Program-made: the position numbers and the translations under genes
Shown here: in pieces, positions 4,434 to 42,517 of the stretch
How positions within the stretch are numbered: position 1 is the first letter of the stretch
Layout: each line of letters starts with the position of its first letter
IMG/VR virus record: IMGVR_UViG_3300042922_001182
Span: 124,001 to 188,000 of that record
Strand: one strand, 5' to 3'
DNA length: 64,000 nucleotides
Notes under the pieces: model-generated
Database searches by the model: none
Told to the model about the DNA's origin: nothing
What the model saw: the letters and a program-made list of their open reading frames with translations, nothing else

Positions 4434-4823
4434 ATGTACAAGAACAACGCCATCAAGCCCATGCACTCCGAGGTTGAGGAGGCCAAGCTGGCACACTGGC
4501 ACGTCATCCGCGACACCCTCAAAGGGGTGGACAAGGTCAACGGCGAGGAGATCAAGCTCATCCAGCTGACCAGCGACCTCACGGTCTTGGTCCAGACGGT
4601 CATGGGCTTCTACGAGATGGTCATCGACGGTGACTCGGTGGTCGCTCGCCCCTGCGTTATGACCATCGAGGATATCGACCTCCCCGTCATCTGCACCATC
4701 TACCGCGATATCAACCTCATCGGTAAAAATGATCGCAAGTCCACTGCCAAGGAGAAGATCGATACCACCGAGGTAAACCCTGCGACCTCCCTCGGTTCGA
4801 TGCTCGGCGGTATGTTCAGCTAA
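4434..4823 (+). CDS. hypothetical protein (putative early)
   Basis: ORF with RBS AAAGGAG, followed by a terminator. Confidence 0.75.
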   Translation: MYKNNAIKPMHSEVEEAKLAHWHVIRDTLKGVDKVNGEEIKLIQLTSDLTVLVQTVMGFYEMVIDGDSVVARPCVMTIEDIDLPVICTIYRDINLIGKNDRKSTAKEKIDTTEVNPATSLGSMLGGMFS

Positions 4824-4862
4824 AAAGAAAAGGGGTACCCGGTGGGTACCCTCTTCTTTTTT
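4822..4862. terminator. bidirectional intrinsic terminator
   Basis: A-rich tract, GGGTACCC-based stem-loop, T-rich tract, between convergent genes. Confidence 0.8.
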
Positions 4863-4935
4863 GCAAGCGAGAACCCGCATCCTCTCGGATGCGGGCTATC
4901 ACTTGCGAAACGGCTCTCGTCAGGAGGAACGAGAA

Positions 4936-15668: not shown

Positions 15669-16432
15669 CTAGAACGTCACGATGTTGCTGTACTGGGAAC
15701 CAGCCGGTGTCTTGATCACCTTGAGGTCCATGCTCTCAAGAACGATGAAGCCGTTCCTGACGTTGTCGGAGGCGATGGTGTCCATGTCGATGAACTGGAT
15801 CAGCCACTCCGGGATGCGGTCGACCGACTTGGGGATGGCCAGGATGGTGAACCCGAACCGCTCCATCTTGGGGCTCTTGAAGACCGCCCTGTGGATGGCC
15901 TCGTACTGCGGGGTGCCGAAGATGGGGGCGAGGTCGCCGATCTTCTCCGCCTTCATCTTGAACAGGAGCACGTCCTCCGGGGCCGACAAGACCGGGAGTC
16001 TCTCCTCCGGGGGCAGCGCCTCCTGGAGGGCGTTCCACACGATGGAGCCGCGCACGGGGGCCTGGGTGTACGGGGCCTTGTACGCGCCGGAGCCGTCGAT
16101 GTACTCGTCGTTCGCGTCGCGGTCGCCGGGGTCGTTGAGGCGACCGGGCACGCCGAAGGTCACCTCGCCACGGGCCAGGCTCTCCTTCACGGACTTCTCG
16201 AACTCGCGGAACTTGCCCAGGACCCCGGACGTGCTCATGTCATCCGAGCCGAGGACGTCGTCCTTGATCAGCTTGGTGAAGAACTGGCGGGTGGTCTTGT
16301 TGACCGTGGTCTTCTTGATCGACAGGCCCTTGATGTCCAGCTTGGGCGGATCGATGATCGTGCCCTCCTGGGCCTTCAGGAGCCCGGCGTACTGCTTCTT
16401 GTTGTTGGTGGTCATCAACCTTGTGTAGAGGA
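15669..16432 (-). CDS. polB: family-B DNA polymerase, exon 2
   Basis: After splicing reads (F)LYTRLMTTNNKKQYAG...LDIKGLSIKK, the PolB KKxY and KG motifs; no RBS of its own. Confidence 0.9.
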
Positions 16433-16624
16433 CTCGGTGTTCACCCGGGGTCGCAGGTCCCGGATCGCCCCTAGGGGCAGCTGCGCGTCTCCGCGCAGGA
16501 CAGACTATATCATCACCCGCTTGGGGTGCCTCCCGTTTGGGGTACCATTGGCTTGTACCCTACGTGCATAAAGCACTAGTCGTTGAACCTTCCCGAAAAA
16601 AGTGAAACTACCCGTCCGTCGACC

Positions 16625-16633
16625 ACATATTCT
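16625..16633 (+). promoter_or_regulatory. early-type promoter motif ACATATTCT inside intron loop L6
   Basis: CGACC-ACATATTCT, one mismatch to the ACATATTAT motif seen at 32846 and 50816. Confidence 0.6.
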
Positions 16634-16710
16634 TTACATGAGCAAGATAGGATTTAGGGTCCGTACTATCATGCCTACGTCAGCACAGGATCCCTTTAGG
16701 AGGAATAACA

Positions 16711-16896
16711 ATGCTCAGCTCTTTGTTCAACGGTATCGGTGGCGCTGTGGAGTCCATCGGCAACGGCGTGTTCGGCGCGGTAGACGAGATCTTGGACGGC
16801 ACCTGGAAGGCCGGTGAGAGCATCGTCAAGGGCGTCGGCGGTGCGGCCGATGGGGCCTGCAAGGCGGTCGACTCGCTGTTCGGCGACATCGACTAG
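16711..16896 (+). CDS. 61-aa amphipathic 11-mer-repeat peptide, antisense within the group I intron
   Basis: Strong RBS AGGAGG, C/G-ending codons like other genes, flanked by promoter motif and terminator. Confidence 0.8.
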   Translation: MLSSLFNGIGGAVESIGNGVFGAVDEILDGTWKAGESIVKGVGGAADGACKAVDSLFGDID

Positions 16897-16902
16897 TCCA
16901 TA

Positions 16903-16936
16903 GGAGGCGGGGGTAACACCCCGCCTCTCTTTTTTT
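16903..16936 (+). terminator. intrinsic terminator of the intron-nested gene
   Basis: GAGGCGGGG-loop-CCCCGCCTC followed by TCTTTTTTT. Confidence 0.85.
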
Positions 16937-17033
16937 CGGGCTTGGCTGCTGATTACCCGCTTCGGGCTTCCCAGCAATTAGAGAGGTTTGCATACGGGCG
17001 TTGCCACCCGTAGGAGCTAGGCCACGCGGGCCA

Positions 17034-18252
17034 ACTCGTTCTTCATGTTGATGATGGGGCGCTTGTCCTCGGGGATGTTCATGTTCCTGGTCAGGGTGGC
17101 GTAGGTGCTCTCGATGACCCTGGCGAGCAGGTAGATGACGACGTTGACGACGCTCACGCGGTCGACGTCCTCCTTCGTCTTGGCCCCCAGCTCGTCGCGG
17201 CAGAACCGGACGAAGGGGTCGACGTTGATGAAGTTGGAGTCCGTGTCCACCACCAGGACGGCGGCCCTGGGGTCCTGCTCGGCCCGCTGGAAGTGGTCCT
17301 CCGGGATGTGGTCGTGGTACACGAAGTGTGCCAGGTAGCCCCAGAGCTCCTTGAGGTAGGGCAGGACGTCCTCCGCCGGGTGGTCGGCGTTCGTGACCTT
17401 GAGGTCGCTGGCGAACAGGGATTCAAGCACCTTCCTGGCGTTGGCGCACCGGCGCAGGAACTCGTAGAGGTTGTTGCGGAAGAAGACTCGCGCCACCTCG
17501 TAGGGGTCCAGGGAGGACACGGCCTTGAGCAGGATCGCCCGCGCCTCGTCGGAGGGGTGCTTGCGGAACCTGGACAGCAGGTGGCCCATGAGCTCGTCGT
17601 GGGTCGGGGGATTGTCGAGGACCCACACCCTGTCCGCGCTGCGCTGGGACTCCTCCGGCATGCAACGCTCGACGAACAGCAGCGCCTCCGACAGGTCGTT
17701 GAACGGGCAGTTACCGGCGAGGAACTGCTCGAAGGCCATGACCGACGCGGTGATGATCGTGCGACCCGTGTACGTGACGCTGGGGCCGACTCGCGGGTTG
17801 AAGAAGATGCAGTTCTTCTCGCCCGACGCGCCGTAGTAGGAGTTGGCCAGGAGCTTGATCGTCTTCTGGTCGCGGTCGTAGTTGTCGTGGAGGGTGCGGT
17901 CCACGTCGTTGACGTGGGCCAGCATCTTCTTCTTCGCCACCTTGCGGCTCTTCATGAGCCACTCCAGCATGGCCGCGATCAGGTTGATCGAGTTGGAGTG
18001 CTGCTTGTAGGCGGTCCCGTAGGGCGTGAACACCGGCTGGTGCTTGCCCAAGAGGAAGTCCGAGAACTGCAGGACGTCGATCTGCTTGTCCGCCCCGGTC
18101 GTGTCGTTGTTGAAGGAGCACCCCGGCTTCCTCACCCTCTCGTCGACGATCGCGTCGACCTTGGCCCGGATGGCCTCGGGGTCCCTGTCGGGGAACTGGC
18201 GGACCAGGACCTCCATGACCTCTGCCTTGTAGGCCTCAAGAGTTGCTGACAT
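17034..18252 (-). CDS. polB: family-B DNA polymerase, exon 1 (spliced product 660 aa)
   Basis: Motif B QKTIKLLANSYYG, SVTYTGR, motif C VVDTDS, ends IINMKNE at the splice site; RBS GGGAGG. Confidence 0.92.
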
Positions 18253-18281: not shown

Positions 18282-18293
18282 TACCGGGGTGTT
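18282..18293 (-). promoter_or_regulatory. AACA-N6-TA promoter for DNA polymerase
   Basis: Minus strand AACA CCCCGG TA, 30 nt upstream of the ATG. Confidence 0.7.
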
Positions 18294-18311: not shown

Positions 18312-19184
18312 CTAGAAGTAGAACCGTTGTCCGCCGACGCCGAAGCTGTGGAAGCCGTGGACCTTCGCCACCGCTTGCCTAACGTCGTTCTCGTCCTTGG
18401 TGATGTACGTACCGCAGTCGTACCGCAGGCTGTCGGGGATACCGTCTCCGTAGTGGACCAGCACCGTCTTCGCCCGGACCCACATCGAGAGCTCCCGATG
18501 GAGCTGCCAGAAGTTGGTATGGACGTCGCTCTTACCGGCGTTCGGGCCGACGAACATCTGGCAGTCGTGGAAGACCATGTCCAGGTCCTTGCCAAGGGTG
18601 CGGTACGGGTACTGCTCAAGGAGCATCGGGTGGATCTCCTTGCAGTCGCTGGTCCAGAGCACCCGCTGGTCGATGAGCAGGCCCCAGCTGTCGTGGCCGT
18701 GGACGTGCTTCATCTTCACGGGTTTCAGGTGGATGTTCTCGAACGTCATGGTCGTCTTTTCGTTGAAAAGCGCCACGTCGAAGTAGGTGCTGATGTCCGC
18801 CTTAACGTGATTGTCCTCCTCGTCCTGTATGTCGAGCATGCCTCCAGAGAGGACGCCGCTCCACAGGGTTCCGACCTGGTCCTCCGAGACGAAGAGCCTC
18901 AGCTTGCGGCCCTTGACGAAGTAGTAGTAGAACCCCAGCGTCTCCAGGCCACCGGCGTGGTCGTCGTGGAGGTGGGTGATGTAGACCGCATCGATCTTGT
19001 CCACGGAGCCGTTCTCCATGATCCGACGAACGGTGTCTGGGCTAGCGTCGATGAGCAGGTTGTATTCTTTCCCGTGGTCCCAGTTCTTCCAGGTGAGCAG
19101 GGCGTTGGTGTTTCCGAGTCCGGTCCTCGACATGGCGGAACCCACCCCGATGAGGGTCAGGCAAAACTTCTTCTTGTTGGACAC
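18312..19184 (-). CDS. metallo-beta-lactamase-fold hydrolase (RNase Z/phosphodiesterase-like)
   Basis: LIGVGSA, LLID, ITHLHDDHAGG (HxHxDH), WTSD, VH and VHY motifs. Confidence 0.88.
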   Translation of the reverse strand: MSNKKKFCLTLIGVGSAMSRTGLGNTNALLTWKNWDHGKEYNLLIDASPDTVRRIMENGSVDKIDAVYITHLHDDHAGGLETLGFYYYFVKGRKLRLFVSEDQVGTLWSGVLSGGMLDIQDEEDNHVKADISTYFDVALFNEKTTMTFENIHLKPVKMKHVHGHDSWGLLIDQRVLWTSDCKEIHPMLLEQYPYRTLGKDLDMVFHDCQMFVGPNAGKSDVHTNFWQLHRELSMWVRAKTVLVHYGDGIPDSLRYDCGTYITKDENDVRQAVAKVHGFHSFGVGGQRFYF

Positions 19185-19200: not shown

Positions 19201-19872
19201 CTAGCTGCTAAGCCCGCCGTGCAGCCGCACGGCCATCTGCTCGTCGATCTCCGCGACGACGGACTGGAGTAGGACGGACTTGTTGTACACCCAGCTCTCC
19301 CGGACGAAGCGGAGGGCCTCCCACGGCAGGCCCCTGGCCGCCTCGTTGCCGGAGGACCACTCCTGGTGGCACCACAGGGCGAACTCCAGGCGGTCGGCCA
19401 CCTTCACGATGTCCGCGATGGCGTCGGTCTTGTGCTCCGACGAGAAGGTCCACACCTGACGGATGAGCTTCTCGATGCGGTCCCTGACCTCCACGGGGAC
19501 GAACCTGCGGAAGCCGTCCCGGATCAGGCTGGCGACGTAGCCCTCGTGGGCCCTGTCGGCTGCCCCGGCGATGGCCTTCTTCAGGTTCTCGTCGCCGTTC
19601 TTGAAGGGGCCGCTGACGTCCCCCGTGATGGCCTCGTCGTAATCGTGGAGGATGGCCGCCCTGAGCACCTTGCCGGAGTCCACGTCGTTGATGTCCATGT
19701 CCTCGACGAGCATCATGCAGATGAACGCCACCTGGAACGAGTGGGCGGAGACCGATTGCGGTTGGTTGACCCGCAGCCCCGGGGCCCGCCAGGTGTAGTC
19801 CAGCTTGCGGGCGAGCTCGAATGCCTTGATCATTGATGAATCTCCTCGGGCCATCTCCAGGCCCCCTTGCAT
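19201..19872 (-). CDS. HD-domain 5'-deoxynucleotidase (YfbR-like); exact start uncertain
   Basis: QSVSAHSFQVA, ILHDYDEAITGD, IVKVADRLE motifs. Confidence 0.85.
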   Translation of the reverse strand: MQGGLEMARGDSSMIKAFELARKLDYTWRAPGLRVNQPQSVSAHSFQVAFICMMLVEDMDINDVDSGKVLRAAILHDYDEAITGDVSGPFKNGDENLKKAIAGAADRAHEGYVASLIRDGFRRFVPVEVRDRIEKLIRQVWTFSSEHKTDAIADIVKVADRLEFALWCHQEWSSGNEAARGLPWEALRFVRESWVYNKSVLLQSVVAEIDEQMAVRLHGGLSS

Positions 19873-20382: not shown

Positions 20383-20531
20383 CCTGCTGAGCTCTGTGGC
20401 CCGTTTAGCGGCGGCGGCCACGCCGAGAGCTACCTCCACACCCCGAAACACTCCGGAAGCCCCCAACCCATTCACGGGTTGGGGGCTTCCGCCCTTCGTT
20501 TTCTCCCGAAGGCGGGCGGGCAACTACGTTC

Positions 20532-20540
20532 ATATATTAT
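20532..20540 (+). promoter_or_regulatory. early-type promoter motif ATATATTAT
   Basis: Upstream of the operon containing beta'-C and the helicase. Confidence 0.7.
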
Positions 20541-20592
20541 CTCCTGCGCGACCTCACGGTCAGCACCCCCCAACTACTAGAGAGGAAGCAGA

Positions 20593-32693: not shown

Positions 32694-32845
32694 CATCCTG
32701 AGGTCTCCCAGCCCGAGGCGGGGCCATCCCAGCAGCCCGTCCCCCGGGGCCATGCGGGGCGTGCAACCCCCGGCCCCTATAATATAAGGAATGGGGGCCG
32801 GAGCAACCTAGCCTTAAGGGATAAAACACCACGCAAAAATCAAAC

Positions 32846-32854
32846 ACATATTAT
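32846..32854 (+). promoter_or_regulatory. early-type promoter motif ACATATTAT
   Basis: AT-rich intergenic region upstream of the HU/H1-like gene. Confidence 0.6.
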
Positions 32855-32970
32855 GATGGCGAGTTCAAGGTTTCAAACTTCGAGCTCCAGGGTATAATGG
32901 TGCTGAGGGCTAGCACATAACGCACCAATGATAACTACCACATAGAGTTTAGGCGTTTAATGAGCAGCCC

Positions 32971-34222: not shown

Positions 34223-37200
34223 ATGATAAACATCCAGACCTACCTGAGGAATATGGGCGCCTCGTCCCTTCTCTCTCTGAGAGACGTGGGCAAGGGCCTG
34301 TTTCCCACTCTGTCGGAGAACATCGACCGCAATAGCGATGTTATCGAACAGGCTTTCCAGCTCGTGCAAGACACCCGAAAGATCCGCACCTCTGCGGGCC
34401 GGATGTTCGACCGCGAGGAGATCAAGCTTGCCAAGACCGGCTTCAAGAACGCGATCGCGGACCTGAAGAGCGGCAACCTCTACAACGAGGAGCGCATGGA
34501 GGCGGACGCCGGTGACTTCGGCGGCGACGGCGGGTTCGACGAGTCGGCCTTCGGCGGGTTCGACGAGTCGGCCTTCAGCGGCGACGCCTCCGATGGAGGG
34601 GCCACCGCCGAGGAGTCGTCCAGCGAGGGAAGCGCCATCGACCTCGACAAGCTCAAGGACTCGCAGGGACAGAGCCTTGAGGTCAGCGCCGTCACCAACA
34701 ACTACAGGCGCACCGTCAACGTCCTGAACCGTGGCTCCAACGGCAGGGTCTCCGACCCCATGATGCAAAAGCTGACGACGGCGACGAACGCCAGGCTCGG
34801 CCAGATGCTCATGACGAGCGTGGCCGTGTCGCAGCACCAGATCCACGCGTTGCAGTCCATCGACGGCAACCTCAACAAGATGCAGGAGTTCAACCTCAAG
34901 CACACAACGGAGTTCCACAAGCGCTCCATCGACTTCTACAACATCGCCACCGTCGCCGCCACCGCCACCCAGGCGGCGGTCGAGGACATCGCGCAGCGCT
35001 CCAGGGAGCAGGCCGAGAGGAACGAGAAGTTCTTCAACCCCAGGAAGAAGGAGAGCCAGCTGGAGAGCGTGTACGGAAGCGATGGTAGCTTCGACTTCGC
35101 CGCCTACCACAAGCTCCTCCTCCGGAAGTTCGACGACGACTACGGCATGTTCGGCAACGCCCTCGGGGACATGGTGAAGGAGTTCATCTCCAGCCCGTTG
35201 TCCAGCGCCATGACGTCCGCCATCGAGAGCTCCATCCCCGCCGCCTTCCGCAAGGCGGCGTCGGAGTTCGACGAGGTGATCGCGGGTATCCCCGCCGCCA
35301 TCCTCACCCAGATGAACGCGTGGGCCGACGACTTCGATAGCCCGTTCCTGCAGAAGATCGGTCAGTTCTTCGGCATGAAGGTCGGCAACAAGAACAACGT
35401 CAACCTCTCCTCCTACGAGAAGGGGGAGGTGCCCTTCGACGGCATGACCCGTAAGTCCATCGTCGAGGTCATCCCTTCCCTTCTCGCCAAGATCCTGGCC
35501 GCCGTTAAGGGCGAGGGCCGGGGCAAGGAGCTCATCTACGACTACGACGCCGGTAGGTTCAACACCCGTGGCGCCGTGGAGCGGGAGTTCGAGGACGGCA
35601 AGCGGACGGCCAGGCTCGACAGCATGGACGGAAGCAAGTCGAAGCTCATCGAGGGCTTCAACAGGGCCAACCCAAACGCCACCAGCGAGCAGGCTACCAT
35701 CGCTCAGGGGGAAATCGAGAACGCCCTCAACGCCCTCTCCAAGCGTCAGCACATCATCAAGACCAGTGGCAAATTCTCCATGGAGGAGCACCTGAAGGCA
35801 GAGGGCATCGGCGAGCAGACTGTGAACTTCATGAAGGAAGCCTACAGTCAGATGAGCCCCACGGAGAAGCACACTCTCCACAAGGAGATCATCGCCAGCG
35901 GCATCAGCATGGACAACTACGTCAATATGCGCCAGGCCAGCCTGGACGACTCCATCAGGGCAGCCTCCAACGACAAGCTGATCCGCAGGCAGGTCACTCA
36001 GATCCCAGGTACTACAGGCGGCCATACGGGGGGCCACGGTGGACCCGGTGGTGGCCCTGGTACGCCAGGTGGAGGACCCCTCCCCGGGGGCCCCACTCTG
36101 GGGCACGAGCGCCCGGAGACCGCCGCCATCGTCGGCGGGCAGATGCCATCTCACCATGTCAACATGCGCGGCGGCGACATCCCGGAGGAGGCGTTCCAGT
36201 ACGCCGACGGCTTCATGGGGACCCTCCAGAAGATCTACCGGACTCCCTTCGACCTGGCCGCCAAGGCCATGCGCGGGGCGAACGTCAAGATCGCGGAGTT
36301 CTTCTTCGGCCACCAGGAAAACCCTCAGGGTTTCCTTGAGACCATGAAGCTGAAGCTCTTCGGCAGCGAGGCTCTGGGCACAAAGGGGATCGTCGGCGAC
36401 CTGAAGCAAAGCCTGAACGACAAGGTCGTCGATCCGCTCAAGCGCTTCCTCATCGGAGAGCGAGACGAGAACGGCATGCTCAAGGGGCCACCCGGCTTCC
36501 TGGACCAGACACAAGCGTTCTTCACGGACAAGCTCTTCAATCCGACCAAGGAGTTCCTCTTCGGACAGGGGAGCACGGACGCGGACGGCAACACCGTCGG
36601 CAAGGGAATCCTCAACTCCCTGTGGGACGGCCTCAAGCTCCACTCGCTCCGCTTCAAGGACTACCTCTTCCGCGAGGAGGAGATGATGGGCGAGGACGGC
36701 CAGATGCTCAAGAAGGGGATCCTGAAGAGCTTCTGGGAGGGCATGAAGGTCTCCGGCCTCAAGCTCAACGACTGGCTCTTCGGACCTCCTACGATGGCCA
36801 TGGACGAGAACGGCAAGACCTTCATCAAGAAGGGCGTGCTGCGCTCCTTCTGGGACGGCACGAAGCAGGCCACCGAGCAGCTCAACAAGTACCTCTTCGG
36901 CTCGGCAGACCTCGTCAAGGATGAAGCCAGCGGCAAGTTCGTCTGGAAGAAGGGCATCCTCCGCGCCCTCTGGGAGGACAAGATCGTCCCGGGCTGGAAC
37001 AACTTCGGCAACTACCTGTTCGGCACCAACCGCGAGGTCACCGGCCCCGACGGCGTCAAGTACATGGCGAAGGGCATCCTTCGCGGCCTCTGGGAGGACA
37101 AGATCGTCCCGGGTTGGAACAGGGTCAACGGCTACCTGTTCGGCACCAGGACCGTCACCGACGAGAACGGCAACGATGTGGAGAAGGACGGCCTGATGCG

Positions 37201-40200
37201 CTGGACGTGGAAGGGCCTGTCCCACCACACGAAGCGCTTCGGGGACTACCTGATGAGGGGCTCCGACACGATCGACCCAGAGACGGGAGAGCTCCTGAAG
37301 AAGGGCCTGCTGCGCCGCGCCTACGACAGCATCACCACCCACGCCAAGAACGCCTTCAACGCCAGCGGCGAGTGGCTCTTCGGCAAGACTGAGAACGGCG
37401 TCCGGACCAAGGACGGCATCTTCACCACCTCGATCAACTTCTTCAAGGGCGAGATCCTCGACCCCCTGAAGCACACCGTCATCGACAGCTGGAATCGCAT
37501 GCACAACTTCTTCATGGAGGGCGTCGTGGCCCCCCTGAAGGGCACCCTGCAGCCGTTCATCACGGAGTTCAAGCTCCAGTTCATGCTGTTCAAGAAGTGG
37601 GGCCACGACCTGTTCACCAACGGCATCAAGATCGTTAAGGACACCGTGGACGACCTGTTCCGCGACGTCTTCGGCAGGCCCCTCACCGACCTCATGAAGC
37701 AGTACGTCATCGATCCGCTGAAGGATGCCCTCAGGAGCATCAAGGACTTCATCGGCAACGTGCTGAAGAACATCATCCTCGCGCCCGTCAAGCTCATCCG
37801 TCAGGCCTCCGACAGCCTGAGGGAGCGGCACAAGGCCATGGGGATCAACTACGATGACAACCGCATCGTCGACATCTTCACCCCCGGTAAGAAGCCCAAG
37901 GGAACCAAGTCCCCCGGTGCGGCCAAGGGCGTGTGGCAGGGCATCGTCGACGCCTACAACGATCGCCGTAACACCGCCGCCCAGAGGCTCGAAGAGAGCA
38001 AGAAGCGTGCGGAGGAGGCGAAGCGCAAGCGCGACGAGGAAGAGGGCCCGGAGGCCACGGGCGGGAGCCCGGTGCCCAAGCCCACCCAGCCGAAGGGAGA
38101 CCCCGGCGGGGCCGCCGCGACCGTCCCCACGTCGCACATCGGCGAGGTGGAGCGCAACCCCATCCAGCGGACGATGGACGCCGTCAAGGAGTACATCCAC
38201 AAGCTGGACGAGCGGCTCATCCCAGACCTGCACTCCGTCAAGGCCTCCGGTGACAAGACGGCGGAGCACACCGGCAACATCGACCGTGGCATCGGCAGCG
38301 TCCTCACCCAGGTGGAGAGAATCGCCAGCACCATGCCCAGGACCCACGTCGGCGACGGCGTGAAGCACCTGGGAGGCTTCGGCGAGGGGGGCATGGAGAT
38401 CGGGACCCTTGAGAGGATCTCCGAGCACACCAGGCACCTCGGCCCCATCTCCGACATGGTGTACCACATCATGAAGACCGTTACCAAGGGCAAGGGCCCC
38501 AAGCGCGGTCTGCTCAGCATGTTCGGCAAGAAGGGCGAGTCCCATGACGACGTCGGTGCTCCGATGTTCTTCAGAGCCGTCAAGGGCATCATCACCTCCC
38601 CGGTGAAGTTCGCCAAGTGGGCCACCGAGACCATCGCCAAGAGCGGCCTCGGGAGCGTCGTCTCCAGCCTCATCCAGGCCCCCATCGCCCTGATGGACAT
38701 GGCCGTCAAGCTGACCACCGGCATCCTGCACGCCGTCGCCGAGTCCGTCAAGGCACTCGGGAGCGTCATCGCAGGTGCCGCCCAGATGATCACGGCCGGT
38801 CTCCAGGCCATCGGTCCCGCCATCGGCGGCATCCTGGGGACGATCACGGGCGTGGTGCGCGAGGGCGTCGGACTGGTGGCCGGTGCCACCAAGGAGCTCG
38901 GCATCGGCCTGGCCGGTGCCACCAAGGAGATCCTGGTGGGCGTCGGGCTCGCCGGTAAGGGCCTCCTCAACTCCCTCGGCATCCTCACCACCGGCATCGC
39001 CAAGACGACTGCGGAGCTCCTCCCGGCGCTCGGCAAGCTCGGCAAGGGAGTCCTGAACGTCCTCAACGCCCTGACCTTCGGCCTCGGCGGTAAGCTCATC
39101 GAGGGCGTCGGCGTCTCCGTCGGCAAGGCGCTCGGCCTCAAGGTCAGAGCCAGGCACGAGGTATTCGTCATCGGCGGCCACCTCGACTTGGTCAAGAAGG
39201 TCGGTCAGGTCCACCACGTCGGATCCGTCGGCAAGATCGGCGGCAAGGGCGTCCCCACGGCGGACGACGCCGTGGCCGACGTCAAGGCGGGCGGTGGCAA
39301 GATCGTCAACGGCATCAAGAACACCTTCTCCCAGATCAGTGCCCACATGACCGCCAGGGCGGAGACCAAGAAGAAGGAGGAGCTTGAGTTCAGGGTAGCG
39401 GACGCCACCATCCAGGGCGAGGCGCACCTCGAAGAGATCAAGAAGACCGGTAAGGGCATGATGAGCTGGCTCCCCCTGATCGGCACCGCGCTGACCGGGT
39501 TGGCCCAGTGGTTCATGGCCAGCAAGTTCGCCACCTCGGTGGCCGGAGCAGTTGCCGGGGCGTTCGCCAAGGGCCCTCTCCTGGAGAAGATGTCCAGCAT
39601 GTTCCGACGCAACGCCGCTCCTGCGGCGGTGGTCGCTGGCGGGGGCAACGACAACGACATCCTCGATGGCGTTGACGGCCCCGAGAGCGACAAGGACCGC
39701 AAGCAGCGGGAGAAGGACGAGAAGAACAAGCGCAAGGGGAACAGGAAGGCCGCCAAGGCCCGCCTGAACCGCATGCGCGGTGGCAGCTCCCTTCAGAAGG
39801 CCGGCAGCGCGGTCGGCGGCGGCATCAGGGCCGTCGGCGGCGGCATCGGCAGGGCGGCAGGTGGTCTGGGTAGGCTCGCTGGCGGTGCCGCGAGGCTAGC
39901 CGGTAAGGCCTTCATCCCCCTCTCCATCGCCATGGGCGCCATGGACACCTTCAGCGGTGCTATGGACGCTGGCAAGACCCTCGGTAAGGCGGAGAAGGAC
40001 GTGAACCTCGGCGACAGGATCGCGGGCGGCCTCGGCGGCCTGGCGACCGGACTGTCGCTCGGTCTCCTCGACCGCAAGCAGACCACCCAGCTCATCAGCG
40101 GCTTCATGTCCGGCTCCGCGAACCTCATGTCCGCAGCCGGTACCAAGATCGTCGAGTGGGGCAAGGGCGCTGTCAAGGGCGCCAAGGACCTCCACGCGTG

Positions 40201-42517
40201 GGCGGTCGACGGCTCGTCCAGCATCATGGCCGGGCTCTGGACCGGGACGGGCCACCTCCTCAGCGAGGCGGGCAAGCGCATGCAGGCCTTCTTCACTGAA
40301 AAGCTCCAGCAGGGCAGCGACATGCTCGGCCTGGGGGTGAAGGGAGGAGGTGACTTCGCCAGCACCCTGGGCGGTGCCGCTCAGTCCATCATGGGCAAGA
40401 TCGGCTCCAACCTGTCGGAGAACTGGACCCGCTACGACAAGATGCTCGGCGGCAACATCTACAAGGTCGGCGACGCGCTCACCAACATGGTCACCAACCT
40501 GTTGGACGCCACAGGGAAGCTCATCGGCAACATCAGCATCAAGATGGGCGAGATCGTCACCAACCTCGGCTCCAAGGGATTCGCCCAGCTCCTCGGTAAG
40601 GACCCCATCGCCACCTTCTTCGGCATGCTGATCAGCCCCGCTGGTACGCTGCTGTCGATGCTCATCAAGGGCATGTCCAAGGAGGGTGAGGGCGACCACA
40701 ACCACGAGGGCAAGGGCGGTCCGGTCAGCGACTTCTGGACCCGGACCAAGGAGGAGATCGTCAACTCCCCGGCCAACCTCGTCGACAACATCAAGAACAT
40801 CGTCGTCGGCAACGTCGACAGCAGCAAGGTCGCCACGGGGGAGTACTCCCAGGCCCCTTGGTTCGCATCGGCTAAGGGCCACAACCTGACCATCACGAGC
40901 GCCTGGGGCGCGAAGGAGGGTTTCAGGAACAGTGGTCACAAGGGCTGGGACTTCGCTGGCCCGATGAACACCCCCCTGGTCTCCCAGACGGACGGCGTCA
41001 TCACCTCGGTCTACACCGGGGCGAAGCCGGTCGGCCACCTGGGTAGCAAGGAGGGCGGTGGCTGGGGCAACCACGTCATCATCCAGGACCAGAACGGCGC
41101 CCAGCACGTCTACGCCCACCTGGCCTCGGTGGCCGACGGCATGCGAACCGGCAGGCAGGTCCGTAGGGGCGAGATCATCGGCTACCTCGGCACCAGCGGC
41201 CGGAGCACCGGTCCCCACCTCCACTACGAGATCATCCGTGGCAGCAAGAAGGTCAACCCGGCCGAGTACTTCGCGAAGGACGGCGCGGCCCTCCTCGCGG
41301 GGAGCAAGACCGTCGCGGAGCACGTCGAGGGCGCCAAGGAGGCCGTCGTCGGAGGTGCGAAGTCCCTGTGGAACATGTTCGAGTCCTCCCTCCATAAGAA
41401 CGAGGGTGGGGCCGGGGTGGCCTACAAGTTCTCCGACGCGCAGGTCGGCACCAGCGGACTCAGCTTCGGCAGGTCCCAGTTCGACATCAAAAACGGCAAC
41501 CACGATGCCAAGCTCCTGGCGATGGGCTTCTCCAAGGAGGAGATTGCCAGGCTGAAGGGCATCAGGCTCAACAAGAGCACCAGCGCCGGGGACAGGGCCT
41601 TCGTCGAGGAGGCCGCCAAGCGACTCCAGGCGAACAAGGCGCTCATCGACCAGTATGACAACCAGCAGACCGGCGGATTGCAGGATACCGCCCTGGAGAG
41701 GCTGCGCAAGCTGCCCCCCTCGGTCAAGATCAGCAACCCCAGCGTCGTGGCCCAGATGGCCGACGCCTTCAACCAGTACGGCGACGGCATCAGCTTCGAC
41801 GGCGTGCTCAACAAGAAGAGCGGCACCATCACTCCCGAGGACTTCCTCAACTGGAGGCTGAGCACGCTCTACGGCAGGAACAACCCGAGAGACGCCAGGC
41901 GCAGGTACGAGAACATCCAGAAGACCTTCACGGGTACCCAGGATGTCAACGTCACCGGCCAGAAGCTGTACGAGATGCTCAAGGGGCACGCTGGACAGCA
42001 GGCTATCATCAGCAACGGCAGCGCCGGGGGTCCCCCCGAGGACCGCATGCCGGGCATCATCAGCAACGGAAGCGCTGGCGGTCCCATCGACCCCCACATG
42101 CTCCCCTGGGACCAGAGGGCCCAGGATGCACTTCCCAAGCCTGTCACCTTCACCGACGAGGCCGCCGACAAGCTCAGCGCGGCCCTCGAAAAGAAGAAGG
42201 AGATCAGCGCAGCCTCGGCCACCAGTTCCGCCCTCGGCGGGGCCAACGCCGAGGTGGTCAGCATGCTCAAGCAGGTGCTAGGCTACCTGTCGGATATCAG
42301 CGGCAACACCGCAGAGACCGCCAGGAACACCTCCATGATCGAGGAGAACACTCAGCAGGCGCTCGCGCAGGCCGAGAAGCACAGGGTGACGGCGGACGCG
42401 TCCGGGGGCGAGGGCAAGGGCAACCCCTTCCTGAACCTCGGCAGCGAGAGCCCCCAGAGGAAGACTCAGGGGTCCATCGCCTCTCCCCTGGCCAGCACGA
42501 TCGCCAGAGGGGCCTAG
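34223..42517 (+). CDS. tape-measure-like tail protein with M23 peptidase and a putative lysozyme-like domain
   Basis: 2764 aa, helical with Trp/Phe-periodic repeats; M23 motifs HKGWDF, YAHL and STGPHLHYEI; downstream NEGG...KFSD...SGLSFGRSQFD domain. Confidence 0.85.
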   Translation: MINIQTYLRNMGASSLLSLRDVGKGLFPTLSENIDRNSDVIEQAFQLVQDTRKIRTSAGRMFDREEIKLAKTGFKNAIADLKSGNLYNEERMEADAGDFGGDGGFDESAFGGFDESAFSGDASDGGATAEESSSEGSAIDLDKLKDSQGQSLEVSAVTNNYRRTVNVLNRGSNGRVSDPMMQKLTTATNARLGQMLMTSVAVSQHQIHALQSIDGNLNKMQEFNLKHTTEFHKRSIDFYNIATVAATATQAAVEDIAQRSREQAERNEKFFNPRKKESQLESVYGSDGSFDFAAYHKLLLRKFDDDYGMFGNALGDMVKEFISSPLSSAMTSAIESSIPAAFRKAASEFDEVIAGIPAAILTQMNAWADDFDSPFLQKIGQFFGMKVGNKNNVNLSSYEKGEVPFDGMTRKSIVEVIPSLLAKILAAVKGEGRGKELIYDYDAGRFNTRGAVEREFEDGKRTARLDSMDGSKSKLIEGFNRANPNATSEQATIAQGEIENALNALSKRQHIIKTSGKFSMEEHLKAEGIGEQTVNFMKEAYSQMSPTEKHTLHKEIIASGISMDNYVNMRQASLDDSIRAASNDKLIRRQVTQIPGTTGGHTGGHGGPGGGPGTPGGGPLPGGPTLGHERPETAAIVGGQMPSHHVNMRGGDIPEEAFQYADGFMGTLQKIYRTPFDLAAKAMRGANVKIAEFFFGHQENPQGFLETMKLKLFGSEALGTKGIVGDLKQSLNDKVVDPLKRFLIGERDENGMLKGPPGFLDQTQAFFTDKLFNPTKEFLFGQGSTDADGNTVGKGILNSLWDGLKLHSLRFKDYLFREEEMMGEDGQMLKKGILKSFWEGMKVSGLKLNDWLFGPPTMAMDENGKTFIKKGVLRSFWDGTKQATEQLNKYLFGSADLVKDEASGKFVWKKGILRALWEDKIVPGWNNFGNYLFGTNREVTGPDGVKYMAKGILRGLWEDKIVPGWNRVNGYLFGTRTVTDENGNDVEKDGLMRWTWKGLSHHTKRFGDYLMRGSDTIDPETGELLKKGLLRRAYDSITTHAKNAFNASGEWLFGKTENGVRTKDGIFTTSINFFKGEILDPLKHTVIDSWNRMHNFFMEGVVAPLKGTLQPFITEFKLQFMLFKKWGHDLFTNGIKIVKDTVDDLFRDVFGRPLTDLMKQYVIDPLKDALRSIKDFIGNVLKNIILAPVKLIRQASDSLRERHKAMGINYDDNRIVDIFTPGKKPKGTKSPGAAKGVWQGIVDAYNDRRNTAAQRLEESKKRAEEAKRKRDEEEGPEATGGSPVPKPTQPKGDPGGAAATVPTSHIGEVERNPIQRTMDAVKEYIHKLDERLIPDLHSVKASGDKTAEHTGNIDRGIGSVLTQVERIASTMPRTHVGDGVKHLGGFGEGGMEIGTLERISEHTRHLGPISDMVYHIMKTVTKGKGPKRGLLSMFGKKGESHDDVGAPMFFRAVKGIITSPVKFAKWATETIAKSGLGSVVSSLIQAPIALMDMAVKLTTGILHAVAESVKALGSVIAGAAQMITAGLQAIGPAIGGILGTITGVVREGVGLVAGATKELGIGLAGATKEILVGVGLAGKGLLNSLGILTTGIAKTTAELLPALGKLGKGVLNVLNALTFGLGGKLIEGVGVSVGKALGLKVRARHEVFVIGGHLDLVKKVGQVHHVGSVGKIGGKGVPTADDAVADVKAGGGKIVNGIKNTFSQISAHMTARAETKKKEELEFRVADATIQGEAHLEEIKKTGKGMMSWLPLIGTALTGLAQWFMASKFATSVAGAVAGAFAKGPLLEKMSSMFRRNAAPAAVVAGGGNDNDILDGVDGPESDKDRKQREKDEKNKRKGNRKAAKARLNRMRGGSSLQKAGSAVGGGIRAVGGGIGRAAGGLGRLAGGAARLAGKAFIPLSIAMGAMDTFSGAMDAGKTLGKAEKDVNLGDRIAGGLGGLATGLSLGLLDRKQTTQLISGFMSGSANLMSAAGTKIVEWGKGAVKGAKDLHAWAVDGSSSIMAGLWTGTGHLLSEAGKRMQAFFTEKLQQGSDMLGLGVKGGGDFASTLGGAAQSIMGKIGSNLSENWTRYDKMLGGNIYKVGDALTNMVTNLLDATGKLIGNISIKMGEIVTNLGSKGFAQLLGKDPIATFFGMLISPAGTLLSMLIKGMSKEGEGDHNHEGKGGPVSDFWTRTKEEIVNSPANLVDNIKNIVVGNVDSSKVATGEYSQAPWFASAKGHNLTITSAWGAKEGFRNSGHKGWDFAGPMNTPLVSQTDGVITSVYTGAKPVGHLGSKEGGGWGNHVIIQDQNGAQHVYAHLASVADGMRTGRQVRRGEIIGYLGTSGRSTGPHLHYEIIRGSKKVNPAEYFAKDGAALLAGSKTVAEHVEGAKEAVVGGAKSLWNMFESSLHKNEGGAGVAYKFSDAQVGTSGLSFGRSQFDIKNGNHDAKLLAMGFSKEEIARLKGIRLNKSTSAGDRAFVEEAAKRLQANKALIDQYDNQQTGGLQDTALERLRKLPPSVKISNPSVVAQMADAFNQYGDGISFDGVLNKKSGTITPEDFLNWRLSTLYGRNNPRDARRRYENIQKTFTGTQDVNVTGQKLYEMLKGHAGQQAIISNGSAGGPPEDRMPGIISNGSAGGPIDPHMLPWDQRAQDALPKPVTFTDEAADKLSAALEKKKEISAASATSSALGGANAEVVSMLKQVLGYLSDISGNTAETARNTSMIEENTQQALAQAEKHRVTADASGGEGKGNPFLNLGSESPQRKTQGSIASPLASTIARGA

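What the first reader, a model, noticed from the sequence alone, without database searches (positions are those of the whole stretch)
16711..16896. Intron-borne 61-aa peptide is built from five 11-residue amphipathic repeats
Seen: LFNGIGGAVES / IGNGVFGAVDE / ILDGTWKAGES / IVKGVGGAADG / ACKAVDSLFGD; Gly-rich, net acidic, no transmembrane stretch, no nuclease motif. Known: 11-mer periodicity marks 3/11 amphipathic lipid-surface-binding helices (apolipoprotein, perilipin, synuclein type). Inference: an early membrane-active or protein-mimic effector, for example superinfection exclusion or anti-defence.
Basis: partly seen in the sequence, partly recalled or inferred. Interest (0 to 1): 0.6.

Follow-up and report, generated by a model that had tools for sequence, protein, structure and literature searches.

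The report
Antisense early mini-gene inside phage intron
A jumbo phage's DNA-polymerase intron carries, on its opposite strand, a small self-contained gene for an orphan 61-residue acidic helical peptide where related phages carry a homing endonuclease; this arrangement is unusual and the peptide's function is unknown.

Summary
ORF 16711-16896 (+) encodes a 61-aa, Gly-rich, acidic peptide (charge -6.5) with real 11-residue periodicity: four clear repeats and one degenerate, family-wise p=0.0004. It is predicted as one helix (residues 2-58), and its hydrophobic moment peaks exactly at 3/11.

It does lie in a group I intron (17033..16433, minus strand) that splits a family-B DNA polymerase gene. 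The phage is a 239-kb AR9/PBS1-like jumbo phage. However, the ORF is antisense to the intron.

It sits in the P6a loop as a complete unit:
- an AR9-type early promoter variant, CACATATTCT-N6-G
- an AGGAGG ribosome-binding site
- the ORF, with codon usage typical of this phage
- a one-way terminator

Two relatives carry a homologous intron at the same polymerase site. There it holds a ~260-aa same-strand homing-endonuclease-like ORF (in P6 in L007).

The peptide has no homologue among 1.84 billion representatives. Its only look-alikes are 11-mer repeat regions of long proteins, mostly tape measure proteins, including this phage's own.

Its charge layout is the reverse of apolipoprotein-type lipid-binding helices. 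I therefore favour a helix-packing or oligomerising early protein. Later pairing with the polymerase pre-mRNA/intron may silence it. Membrane action is not excluded. The function is untested.

The parts
17034..18252 (-). PolB (divergent family B DNA polymerase) exon 1, ending ...PIINMKNE plus the first base (T) of a split codon
   Evidence: Pfam PF20286/PF00136. It is 37% identical to AR9 g152 residues 15-407. The U at 17034 aligns with the splice-site U of the Rfam P1.
16433..17033 (-). Group I intron, 601 nt, with no homing endonuclease gene
   Evidence: RF00028 57.3 bits over 17043..16481. Ends were set from the U.G pair in P1, the terminal G at 16433, and exon-by-exon alignment to uninterrupted AR9 g152 (NEFFYKRLM against NE|F|LYTRLM). 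The MFE fold reproduces P1-P9 plus two 3' hairpins.
15669..16432 (-). PolB exon 2, starting with TC of the split TTC (Phe) codon and then LYTRLMTTNNKKQYAG (KxY motif region)
   Evidence: 36% identical to AR9 g152 residues 399-641; Pfam PF20286.
16592..16601 (.). 3' arm (in the intron RNA) of the P6a stem that closes the inserted cassette
   Evidence: 10-nt perfect inverted repeat with 16931-16940; paired in the MFE fold.
16931..16940 (.). 5' arm (in the intron RNA) of the P6a stem; on the plus strand the same bases form the T-run of the terminator
16624..16640 (+). Early (virion RNAP)-type promoter variant CACATATTCT-TTACAT-G, with predicted start at G16640
   Evidence: Genome-wide the motif has 11 perfect copies (0.019 expected) and 13 one-mismatch copies (0.75 expected), mostly intergenic. 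Chance in this 110-nt stretch is 1.8e-4. AR9 early consensus is AAATATATATTAT-(6N)-G+1 (PMC5312081).
16698..16703 (+). Shine-Dalgarno AGGAGG, 7 nt before the ATG
   Evidence: read directly from the sequence
16711..16896 (+). 61-aa ORF (stop included): acidic, Gly/Ala-rich hendecad-repeat peptide
   Evidence: GC1/2/3 is 0.61/0.46/0.87, like the phage's genes. Codon log-likelihood is 0.622 per codon, against a real-gene mean of 0.693, and is above the 99th percentile of all five non-coding frames. Periodicity; AF2 helix 2-58, pLDDT 82.
16903..16937 (+). Intrinsic terminator: 10-bp GC-rich hairpin followed by T7. It works in one direction only, because the minus-strand reading has no U-run after the hairpin.
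   Evidence: (I5), sequence
18282..18293 (-). Late (non-virion RNAP)-type promoter AACACCCCGGTA, 30 nt before the PolB ATG
   Evidence: AACA-N6-TA is the top gapped motif in upstream regions (26 against 1.4 expected). It has 52 sites, 39 of them intergenic. AR9 late consensus is AACA-(6N)-TA/G.
38876..39022 (+). Residues 1552-1600 of the phage's 2764-aa tape measure protein: the 11-periodic Gly-rich stretch that the peptide resembles
   Evidence: 33% identity over 49 aa, E=6e-4. This is the most 11-periodic part of the TMP. The similarity beats column-preserving shuffles only at p=0.01.

Best explanation
SHOWN: the window belongs to a 239-kb AR9/PBS1-like jumbo phage. A 601-nt group I intron without a homing endonuclease interrupts its family-B DNA polymerase gene on the minus strand. 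The terminal loop of intron helix P6a holds a 328-nt cassette on the opposite strand. The cassette has an early-type promoter variant, a 71-nt leader, AGGAGG, a 61-codon ORF with the phage's codon usage, and a one-way hairpin/T-run terminator. The T-run doubles as one arm of P6a.

INFERRED: this is a real, moron-like early gene that uses the intron loop as a safe harbour, because whatever sits there is spliced out of the polymerase mRNA. It occupies the same P6 position where the homologous intron of a relative (L007) carries a same-strand homing endonuclease gene. The injected virion RNA polymerase would transcribe it straight after infection.

INFERRED, more weakly: the product is one ~57-residue (about 8.5 nm) amphipathic helix with 11/3 periodicity. 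Its apolar face (Ile/Leu at a, Val/Ile at e, Val at i) is flanked by a ridge of small residues, Gly at d and Ala at h, forming a GxxxA pair every 11 residues. This is the repeat type of the Gly-rich core of tape measure proteins. Such a face is built for close helix-helix packing, so I propose the peptide self-assembles into a bundle or docks on a helical target. I do not think it coats lipid like an apolipoprotein.

SPECULATIVE: the polymerase gene has a late-type promoter. Its pre-mRNA and the excised intron are perfectly complementary to the whole mini-gene mRNA, ribosome-binding site included. They would mask or destroy that mRNA, restricting the peptide to the early phase.
For: Intron. 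Junction restoring NEF(F/L)Y.RLM...NKK.YAG.

The coding frame is the plus strand. GC1>GC2 with GC3 0.87 matches real genes, whereas the aligned minus frame has GC1 0.46 / GC2 0.61 and an LLR of -0.30. The plus-frame LLR of 0.622 exceeds the 99th percentile of non-coding frames.

Signals: SD and terminator. Early motif: 11 perfect plus 13 one-mismatch copies against 0.02 and 0.75 expected, with G at +1. It is identical in form to the mapped AR9 early promoters (PMC5312081). [quoted passage not shown] Late motif before PolB and before the TMP gene.

Relatives: L006 and L007 break PolB at the same MK(N/S)E site. L007 shares the intron core elements and has a 264-aa ORF in P6 on the sense strand. 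There is no HEG remnant in this intron.

Peptide: periodicity, moment and wheel. AF2 single helix, pLDDT 82. Look-alikes are TMP-type repeats: PHROG TMP families at E 0.0076-0.3, own TMP at E 6e-4, and P0004, which lies between T4 baseplate and portal genes.
Against: There is no homologue of comparable length anywhere, so selection on the protein cannot be tested. The promoter has one mismatch (A to C in ATTAT) that no other site in the genome shows. The AR9 paper reports that the virion RNAP can be very sensitive to single deviations. No transcript data could be obtained. AF2 ran without an alignment and pTM is only 0.35; 21% Gly argues for disorder in isolation. Self-association has no computational support so far. 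Similarity to the TMP is largely explained by shared periodicity and composition (column-preserving shuffle p=0.01). Antisense silencing is pure inference.
Confidence: 0.45

Rival explanations
1. One reading: the peptide is a membrane-active early effector, for example for superinfection exclusion or anti-defence. It would be disordered in the cytoplasm and fold into a 3/11 amphipathic helix lying on, or oligomerising in, the host membrane.
For: The amphipathic moment is strong and continuous over 57 residues. Gly-rich helices often fold only at interfaces. The look-alike TMP segments are the hydrophobic Gly-rich parts of tape measure proteins. A net negative charge does not rule out membrane action: the human peptide dermcidin is about 49 residues long, anionic and a single long helix. 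It pre-assembles into a hexamer and enters membranes under voltage (PMC5681987). The early promoter type fits an exclusion function.
Against: Charge is -6.5, with acidic residues near the polar/apolar boundary and Lys in the centre of the polar face. This is the reverse of class A lipid-binding helices and is unfavourable on anionic bacterial membranes. There is no basic anchor, no transmembrane stretch and no signal peptide. There is no match to apolipoprotein, perilipin, synuclein or LEA families and none to dermcidin in the PDB sequence search at E<=10.
Confidence: 0.25
2. The functional product is the RNA. An early antisense transcript across the intron's P6 insert would modulate splicing, stability or timing of the polymerase pre-mRNA, and the ORF would be incidental.
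For: The whole transcript is complementary to the PolB pre-mRNA. The two promoters are of different temporal classes. AR9 also has antisense promoters.
Against: An RNA-only role does not explain the gene-like codon bias in one specific frame, a consensus AGGAGG at ideal spacing, or an 11-residue protein periodicity with a perfect helical moment.
Confidence: 0.08
3. It is a relic or silent passenger: a captured gene fragment, possibly TMP-derived, that is no longer expressed because the promoter has decayed, and that has no current function.
For: The promoter mismatch is unique in the genome, and AR9 shows a one-mismatch site can be dead. The peptide is an orphan. There is weak residual similarity to the phage's own TMP.
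Against: The ORF, SD, terminator and P6a closing stem are all intact, and codon usage is fully adapted. One-mismatch promoter copies are 17-fold over-represented and mostly intergenic, so many of them are probably used.
Confidence: 0.12

Closest known systems
Phage group I introns carrying a gene with its own promoter in a peripheral loop (T4 td/I-TevI type; AR9 g190 HNH endonuclease in the g189 intron)
   Same: A group I intron sits in a conserved site of an essential phage gene. The cargo lies in a peripheral loop (P6). It has its own promoter of a different temporal class from the host gene. For AR9 this is stated in PMC5312081 and in the annotation.
   Different: The cargo here is not a homing endonuclease. 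It is only 61 aa, lies on the opposite strand, and has its own terminator.
Antisense homing endonuclease genes in nuclear rDNA group I introns (Didymium iridis S956-2 / I-DirII)
   Same: The ORF is antisense to the ribozyme, lies in a peripheral helix, and is expressed from its own promoter (PMC3073962, PMC3679873).
   Different: Those are eukaryotic, encode endonucleases, and are Pol II-driven with a spliceosomal intron and poly(A). Here the host is a phage protein-coding gene and the cargo is not a nuclease.
Phage morons (autonomous promoter-gene-terminator units inserted between essential genes)
   Same: A compact unit with its own promoter-like element and intrinsic terminator, transcribed independently of its neighbours. 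The small accessory protein has no relatives. (The moron concept is cited from established knowledge.)
   Different: It is lodged inside an intron loop within a gene rather than between genes. It uses the phage's own virion-RNAP promoter type rather than a host sigma-70 promoter; no sigma-70-like site was found.
Hendecad (11-residue) Gly-rich repeat regions of tape measure proteins
   Same: Same repeat length and residue pattern. The only family hits are TMP PHROGs. It matches the phage's own TMP at 33% over 49 aa and TMP-like P0004.
   Different: The peptide is 61 aa instead of 1000-2800 aa. It is acidic and less hydrophobic, lies outside the tail module, and has an early rather than a late promoter. 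Homology is not established.
Class A 11-mer amphipathic lipid-binding helices (apolipoproteins, alpha-synuclein, perilipins)
   Same: 11/3 periodicity and a long uninterrupted amphipathic helix.
   Different: No sequence-family match. The charge topology is reversed and the net charge strongly negative.

Membership tests
Group I intron (RF00028) | Covariance-model score above the gathering threshold, with P1-P9 core | tested here: met
   57.3 bits against a cut-off of 50, covering the full model 1-253. The MFE fold shows the helices.
Group I intron (RF00028) | U at the end of the 5' exon paired with G in P1; G as the last intron base; removal restores the conserved reading frame | tested here: met
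   U17034 pairs with G in the Rfam alignment and G16433 ends the intron. The exons, compared separately with AR9 g152, abut at NE|F|LY with no gap. The joined sequence was not built.
Group I intron (RF00028) | Self-splicing activity | not testable with these tools
   Needs in vitro transcription and splicing, or RNA reads.
Homing endonuclease (LAGLIDADG, GIY-YIG, HNH, His-Cys, PD-(D/E)xK) | Nuclease domain or motif | tested here: not met
   No Pfam match at E<=10. tblastn of the three relatives' intron ORFs against this intron gives E>=0.87.
AR9-type early (virion RNAP) promoter | ATATTAT core, 6 nt, G at +1, intergenic and oriented towards a gene | tested here: inconclusive
   9 of 10 core positions match, G at +1 is present, and it lies 71 nt before the ATG. 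One A-to-C mismatch. Activity is unknown, and AR9 RNAP is sensitive to some single changes.
Apolipoprotein / synuclein / perilipin class A amphipathic helices | Sequence-family membership | tested here: not met
   No Pfam family at E<=10; no PDB relative.
Apolipoprotein / synuclein / perilipin class A amphipathic helices | 11/3 amphipathic periodicity | tested here: met
   Moment 0.436, maximal at 98.18 degrees, p<2e-4 against shuffles.
Apolipoprotein / synuclein / perilipin class A amphipathic helices | Basic residues at the polar/apolar interface and acidic residues at the centre of the polar face | tested here: not met
   Lys lies at a mean of 166 degrees from the moment and Asp/Glu at 136 degrees, which is the reverse.
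Apolipoprotein / synuclein / perilipin class A amphipathic helices | Lipid-induced folding and binding | not testable with these tools
   Needs CD or flotation with liposomes.
Tape measure protein | Significant family match | tested here: inconclusive
   phrog_58 E=0.0076 and phrog_305 E=0.096. Own TMP E=6e-4, but p=0.01 against periodicity-preserving shuffles.
Tape measure protein | Very long protein encoded in the tail module and expressed late | tested here: not met
   61 aa, inside the PolB intron, with an early-type promoter. The real TMP is at 34223-42517 with a late-type promoter.
Type I toxin-antitoxin | Small hydrophobic membrane toxin plus overlapping antisense RNA | tested here: not met
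   An antisense partner exists by geometry, but the peptide has no transmembrane segment and is acidic.

The most novel reading that the evidence does not exclude
The intron and its passenger form a reciprocal antisense timer around a tape-measure mimic. The virion RNA polymerase makes the peptide immediately after injection. The peptide's TMP-like hendecad helix would co-assemble with, and block, the tape measure or ejection channel of superinfecting phages. When the late-type polymerase promoter fires, the pre-mRNA and the excised intron pair with the mini-gene mRNA and shut it off before the phage's own TMP is made. An intron loop would then be a regulated safe harbour for an exclusion gene, which would be a new role for a phage group I intron.
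Probability: 0.06. Interest if true: 0.8.

Novelty: new variant of a known kind. Interest (0 to 1): 0.5.

Why it matters
Cargo in phage group I introns is almost always a homing endonuclease on the sense strand. Here a complete, oppositely oriented early transcription unit for a non-nuclease orphan peptide sits in the same P6 loop where the homologous intron of a relative keeps its endonuclease.

If it is expressed, three things follow:
- Intron loops can serve as neutral landing sites for accessory (moron-like) genes inside essential genes.
- There would be a built-in sense/antisense relation between an early gene and a later-transcribed replication gene.
- Jumbo-phage early proteomes would gain a very simple, designable-looking 11/3 helical peptide.

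Separately, AR9's two unusual promoter types turn out to be conserved in a 63.5% GC phage whose polymerase is only 37% identical. This makes temporal class predictable from sequence across this clade.

Tried and rejected
Searches for relatives:
- Word-index protein search: no candidate.
- Exhaustive HMMER over 1.84 billion representatives: four hits, all long repeat proteins, none of similar length.
- Back-translated searches of viral and metagenome contigs with the peptide, and of viral contigs with PolB exon 1: nothing.
- Megablast of the locus against GenBank phages: nothing.
- ESM Atlas: best score 0.80, the level a third of shuffled proteins reach. The Rv1893 lead was not confirmed by Pfam at E<=10.
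- PADLOC and PDB sequence searches: nothing usable.

Other attempts:
- Homo-oligomer prediction with 4 copies gave no verdict (score 0.01). It is not evidence either way.
- No sigma-70-like promoter was found in the cassette.
- I looked for a decayed endonuclease gene on the intron's sense strand. None was found, and the 69-aa minus-strand ORF 16680-16889 has the wrong codon-position GC pattern and a negative coding score.
- AR9's two small intron ORFs, g206 and g207, show no resemblance.
- Literature searches for the 11-residue periodicity of tape measure proteins did not retrieve a citable paper. That point therefore rests on my own computation on this phage's TMP.
- The resemblance to dermcidin's repeat pattern is recalled from memory and was not aligned. 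Only its general properties are cited.
- The spliced polymerase was never joined or searched as one sequence. The exons were compared separately by reference.

Full report
WHAT IS THERE. The window is bases 124001-188000 of a 238,984-bp viral record with direct terminal repeats and 63.5% GC. Its family-B DNA polymerase is 37% identical to that of Bacillus phages PBS1 and AR9, and more distantly related to those of Yersinia phiR1-37 and the Staphylococcus jumbo phages. This is therefore an AR9/PBS1-like jumbo phage with no close sequenced relative. The best metagenomic PolB is 42-45% identical.

THE INTRON. The polymerase gene lies on the minus strand in two ORFs, 17017-18252 and 15669-16418. 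Between them Rfam finds a group I intron at 17043..16481 on the minus strand. It scores 57.3 bits and is the only one in the genome. In the Rfam alignment the splice-site U of P1 is U17034, paired with G. I compared the two exons separately, by reference, with the uninterrupted AR9 polymerase g152. Exon 1 matches up to ...KRPIINMKNE and exon 2 matches from LYTRLM..NKKQYAG, where AR9 reads NMKNEFFYKRLMLTRNKKSYAG. The only junction that has a U before the 5' splice site, a G as last intron base, and the correct frame is 17034|16432. It creates a TTC (Phe) codon. The intron is therefore 17033..16433, 601 nt. The 48 nt beyond the Rfam match form two further hairpins. I did not build or search the joined sequence.

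THE CASSETTE. Rfam places a 344-nt insertion in P6. A perfect 10-bp inverted repeat, 16592-16601 with 16931-16940, forms a P6a stem that closes it. Everything between is organised for the plus strand, antisense to the intron:
- CACATATTCT at 16624-16633, six bases, then G16640
- a 71-nt leader
- AGGAGG at 16698-16703, 7 nt before the ATG
- the ORF at 16711-16896
- a 10-bp GC-rich hairpin at 16903-16928, followed by seven T's

The T-run is the same DNA as one arm of P6a. Read on the minus strand, the hairpin is preceded by A's and not followed by U's, so it should not stop polymerase-gene transcription.

IS THE ORF A GENE? GC at codon positions 1/2/3 is 0.61/0.46/0.87, which is the pattern of this phage's long genes (0.54-0.63 / 0.34-0.48 / 0.89-0.97). 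The minus-strand frame that shares the same third positions has GC1 0.46 and GC2 0.61 and gives a Pro/Ser/Thr/Ala-rich product. With a codon table trained on genes of 200 aa or more, the ORF scores 0.622 bits per codon. Real 61-codon pieces average 0.693. The 99th percentiles of the five non-coding frames are 0.571 or less, and the minus-strand 69-aa ORF scores -0.30. No real gene overlaps the ORF on the other strand, since that strand is intron. The bias therefore cannot be a shadow of another gene. I take the ORF as very probably translated (about 0.8).

PROMOTER CLASS. A de novo k-mer search of upstream regions found CACATATTAT. Its copies are followed by G after exactly six bases. There are 11 perfect copies against 0.019 expected and 13 one-mismatch copies against 0.75 expected, and most are intergenic. 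A gapped-motif search of the remaining upstream regions returned AACA-N6-TA as by far the top motif. It occurs in 26 regions against 1.4 expected. Genome-wide there are 52 sites, 39 of them intergenic, at a median of 42 nt before a start codon.

These are the two consensus elements mapped experimentally in AR9. AAATATATATTAT-(6N)-G+1 marks early promoters, read by the injected virion RNAP. AACA-(6N)-TA/G marks late promoters, read by the non-virion RNAP (PMC5312081). The mini-gene has the early type with one mismatch; the chance of such a site in its 110-nt upstream stretch is 1.8e-4. The polymerase gene has the late type, AACACCCCGGTA, 30 nt before its ATG, as does the tape measure gene.

Two caveats apply. 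The A-to-C change occurs at no other site in the genome. The AR9 study also found one single-mismatch site to be inactive. [quoted passage not shown] However, g190 is an HNH endonuclease on the sense strand.

RELATIVES. Metagenomic PolB ORFs P0091 (locus L006) and P0065 (locus L007) stop just after the same MK(N/S)E. In L007 the sequence after GAGT continues with the same intron core elements: TTAATTG.CTGGGAAG, ATCAGCAGC.AAGC, GTTCAACGACTA and GATATAGTCTG. A 264-aa ORF sits in P6 on the sense strand. L006 has a 260-aa ORF in the same place. These ORFs and a third from L005 are 40-43% identical to each other and carry faint DUF723/DUF4379 signals, so they look like homing endonucleases. They have no trace in this phage's intron (E>=0.87). 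The site is therefore a recurrent intron target whose usual cargo is a sense-strand endonuclease gene. In this phage the P6 loop, which holds that cargo in L007, holds the antisense mini-gene.

THE PEPTIDE. Periodicity at lag 11 is significant (z=5.3, family-wise p=0.0004). AlphaFold2 without an alignment gives one helix over residues 2-58, with mean pLDDT 82 and pTM 0.35. The hydrophobic moment of residues 2-59 peaks at exactly 360x3/11 degrees, at 0.436 against 0.095+-0.05 for shuffles.

On the 11/3 wheel:
- the large apolar residues lie within about +-75 degrees of the moment
- Ala (position h) lies at -58 degrees and Gly (position d) at -91 degrees, forming a small-residue ridge with a GxxxA pair every 11 residues
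- Asp/Glu lie at +138 and -123 degrees, and Lys lies opposite the moment at 156-171 degrees

This is the reverse of the class A arrangement of apolipoprotein-type helices. That classification comes from established knowledge (Segrest); the geometry was computed here. With a charge of -6.5 it makes simple adsorption to an anionic bacterial membrane unattractive. It does not exclude membrane action by an oligomer. Dermcidin is an anionic helical peptide of about 49 residues that pre-assembles into a hexamer and enters membranes under voltage (PMC5681987). I did not align the two.

RELATIVES OF THE PEPTIDE. There are none of similar size. The four HMMER hits are 11-mer repeat regions of a 4377-aa adhesin, a 1279-aa phage protein, a 345-aa membrane-anchored protein and the N-terminus of a Na/H exchanger. 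The 1279-aa protein lies between T4-type baseplate and portal genes. The only family hits are weak matches to tape measure PHROGs. In the phage's own genome the peptide matches TMP residues 1552-1600 at 33% identity, E=6e-4. This is the most 11-periodic stretch of that 2764-aa protein. Shuffles that keep each repeat column intact still score 55.5+-6.3 against the observed 72 (p=0.01), while full shuffles score 41.5+-5.2. Most of the similarity is therefore shared repeat type, and common descent is unproven.

INTERPRETATION. The shown parts are the intron, the antisense cassette with all its signals, the coding bias, the periodic amphipathic helix, and the orphan status. The inferred parts are early expression, helix packing as the mode of action, and silencing of the mini-gene by the complementary polymerase pre-mRNA and excised intron. 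Helix packing rests on the small-residue ridge and the TMP-type repeat. I rate the rivals below this reading, for the reasons given in their sections: a membrane-active effector, an RNA-only function, and a silent relic. The function of the peptide remains untested.

VERDICT. It is an ordinary kind of element (a phage group I intron with cargo) in an unusual configuration: non-nuclease, antisense, with its own early-type promoter and terminator. The product is an orphan. It is a new variant of a known kind, of moderate interest (0.5).

Noticed in passing
whole genome G000; in the window e.g. 18282-18293(-), 20531-20547(+), 32845-32861(+): The phage keeps both AR9 promoter consensus elements, ATATTAT-N6-G (early) and AACA-N6-TA (late). 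It does so despite 63.5% GC and only 37% PolB identity to AR9. Temporal classes can therefore be read from sequence (PMC5312081).
   Followed up: partly
L006:5252-6600 and L007:3521-4925: Metagenomic relatives carry a group I intron at the same PolB site with a ~260-aa sense-strand endonuclease-like ORF (shown to lie in P6 for L007). L007 appears to have a second intron about 95 nt further on (4614-4922, 81.7 bits). The PolB ORF of L005 breaks at the DTD motif instead.
   Followed up: partly
window 18312-19184 (-): A metallo-beta-lactamase-fold protein matches the anti-Pycsar Apyc1 family (PF23023, 6.7e-21, above the cut-off). It lies directly upstream of PolB.
   Followed up: no
window 19201-19872 (-): A YfbR-like HD-domain 5'-deoxynucleotidase lies next to the replication genes. 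In AR9 a 5'(3')-deoxyribonucleotidase flanks the polymerase. This may hint at uracil-containing DNA as in PBS1/AR9, which was not tested.
   Followed up: no
window 34223-42517 (+): A 2764-aa tape measure protein with a C-terminal M23 peptidase domain (PF01551, 9e-23) and a late-type promoter 42 nt upstream. Residues ~1520-1620 form a strongly 11-periodic Gly-rich block.
   Followed up: partly
G000:C1:93766-94197 (outside the window): A region elsewhere in the phage genome is related to the relatives' intron endonucleases (27-35% identity, E about 1e-6). It may be a free-standing homing endonuclease gene.
   Followed up: no
window 16716 and 16761 (-): Two AACA-N6-TG matches lie on the minus strand inside the mini-gene. 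They are probably chance, since 171 such T[AG] sites occur genome-wide and mostly in genes.
   Followed up: no
L004:24593-25028 (AR9 g206, g207): AR9 is annotated with two small ORFs (47 and 51 aa) lying within the span of virion protein gene g205, which is annotated as joined from three pieces. They lie on the sense strand and are unrelated to the peptide studied here.
   Followed up: yes
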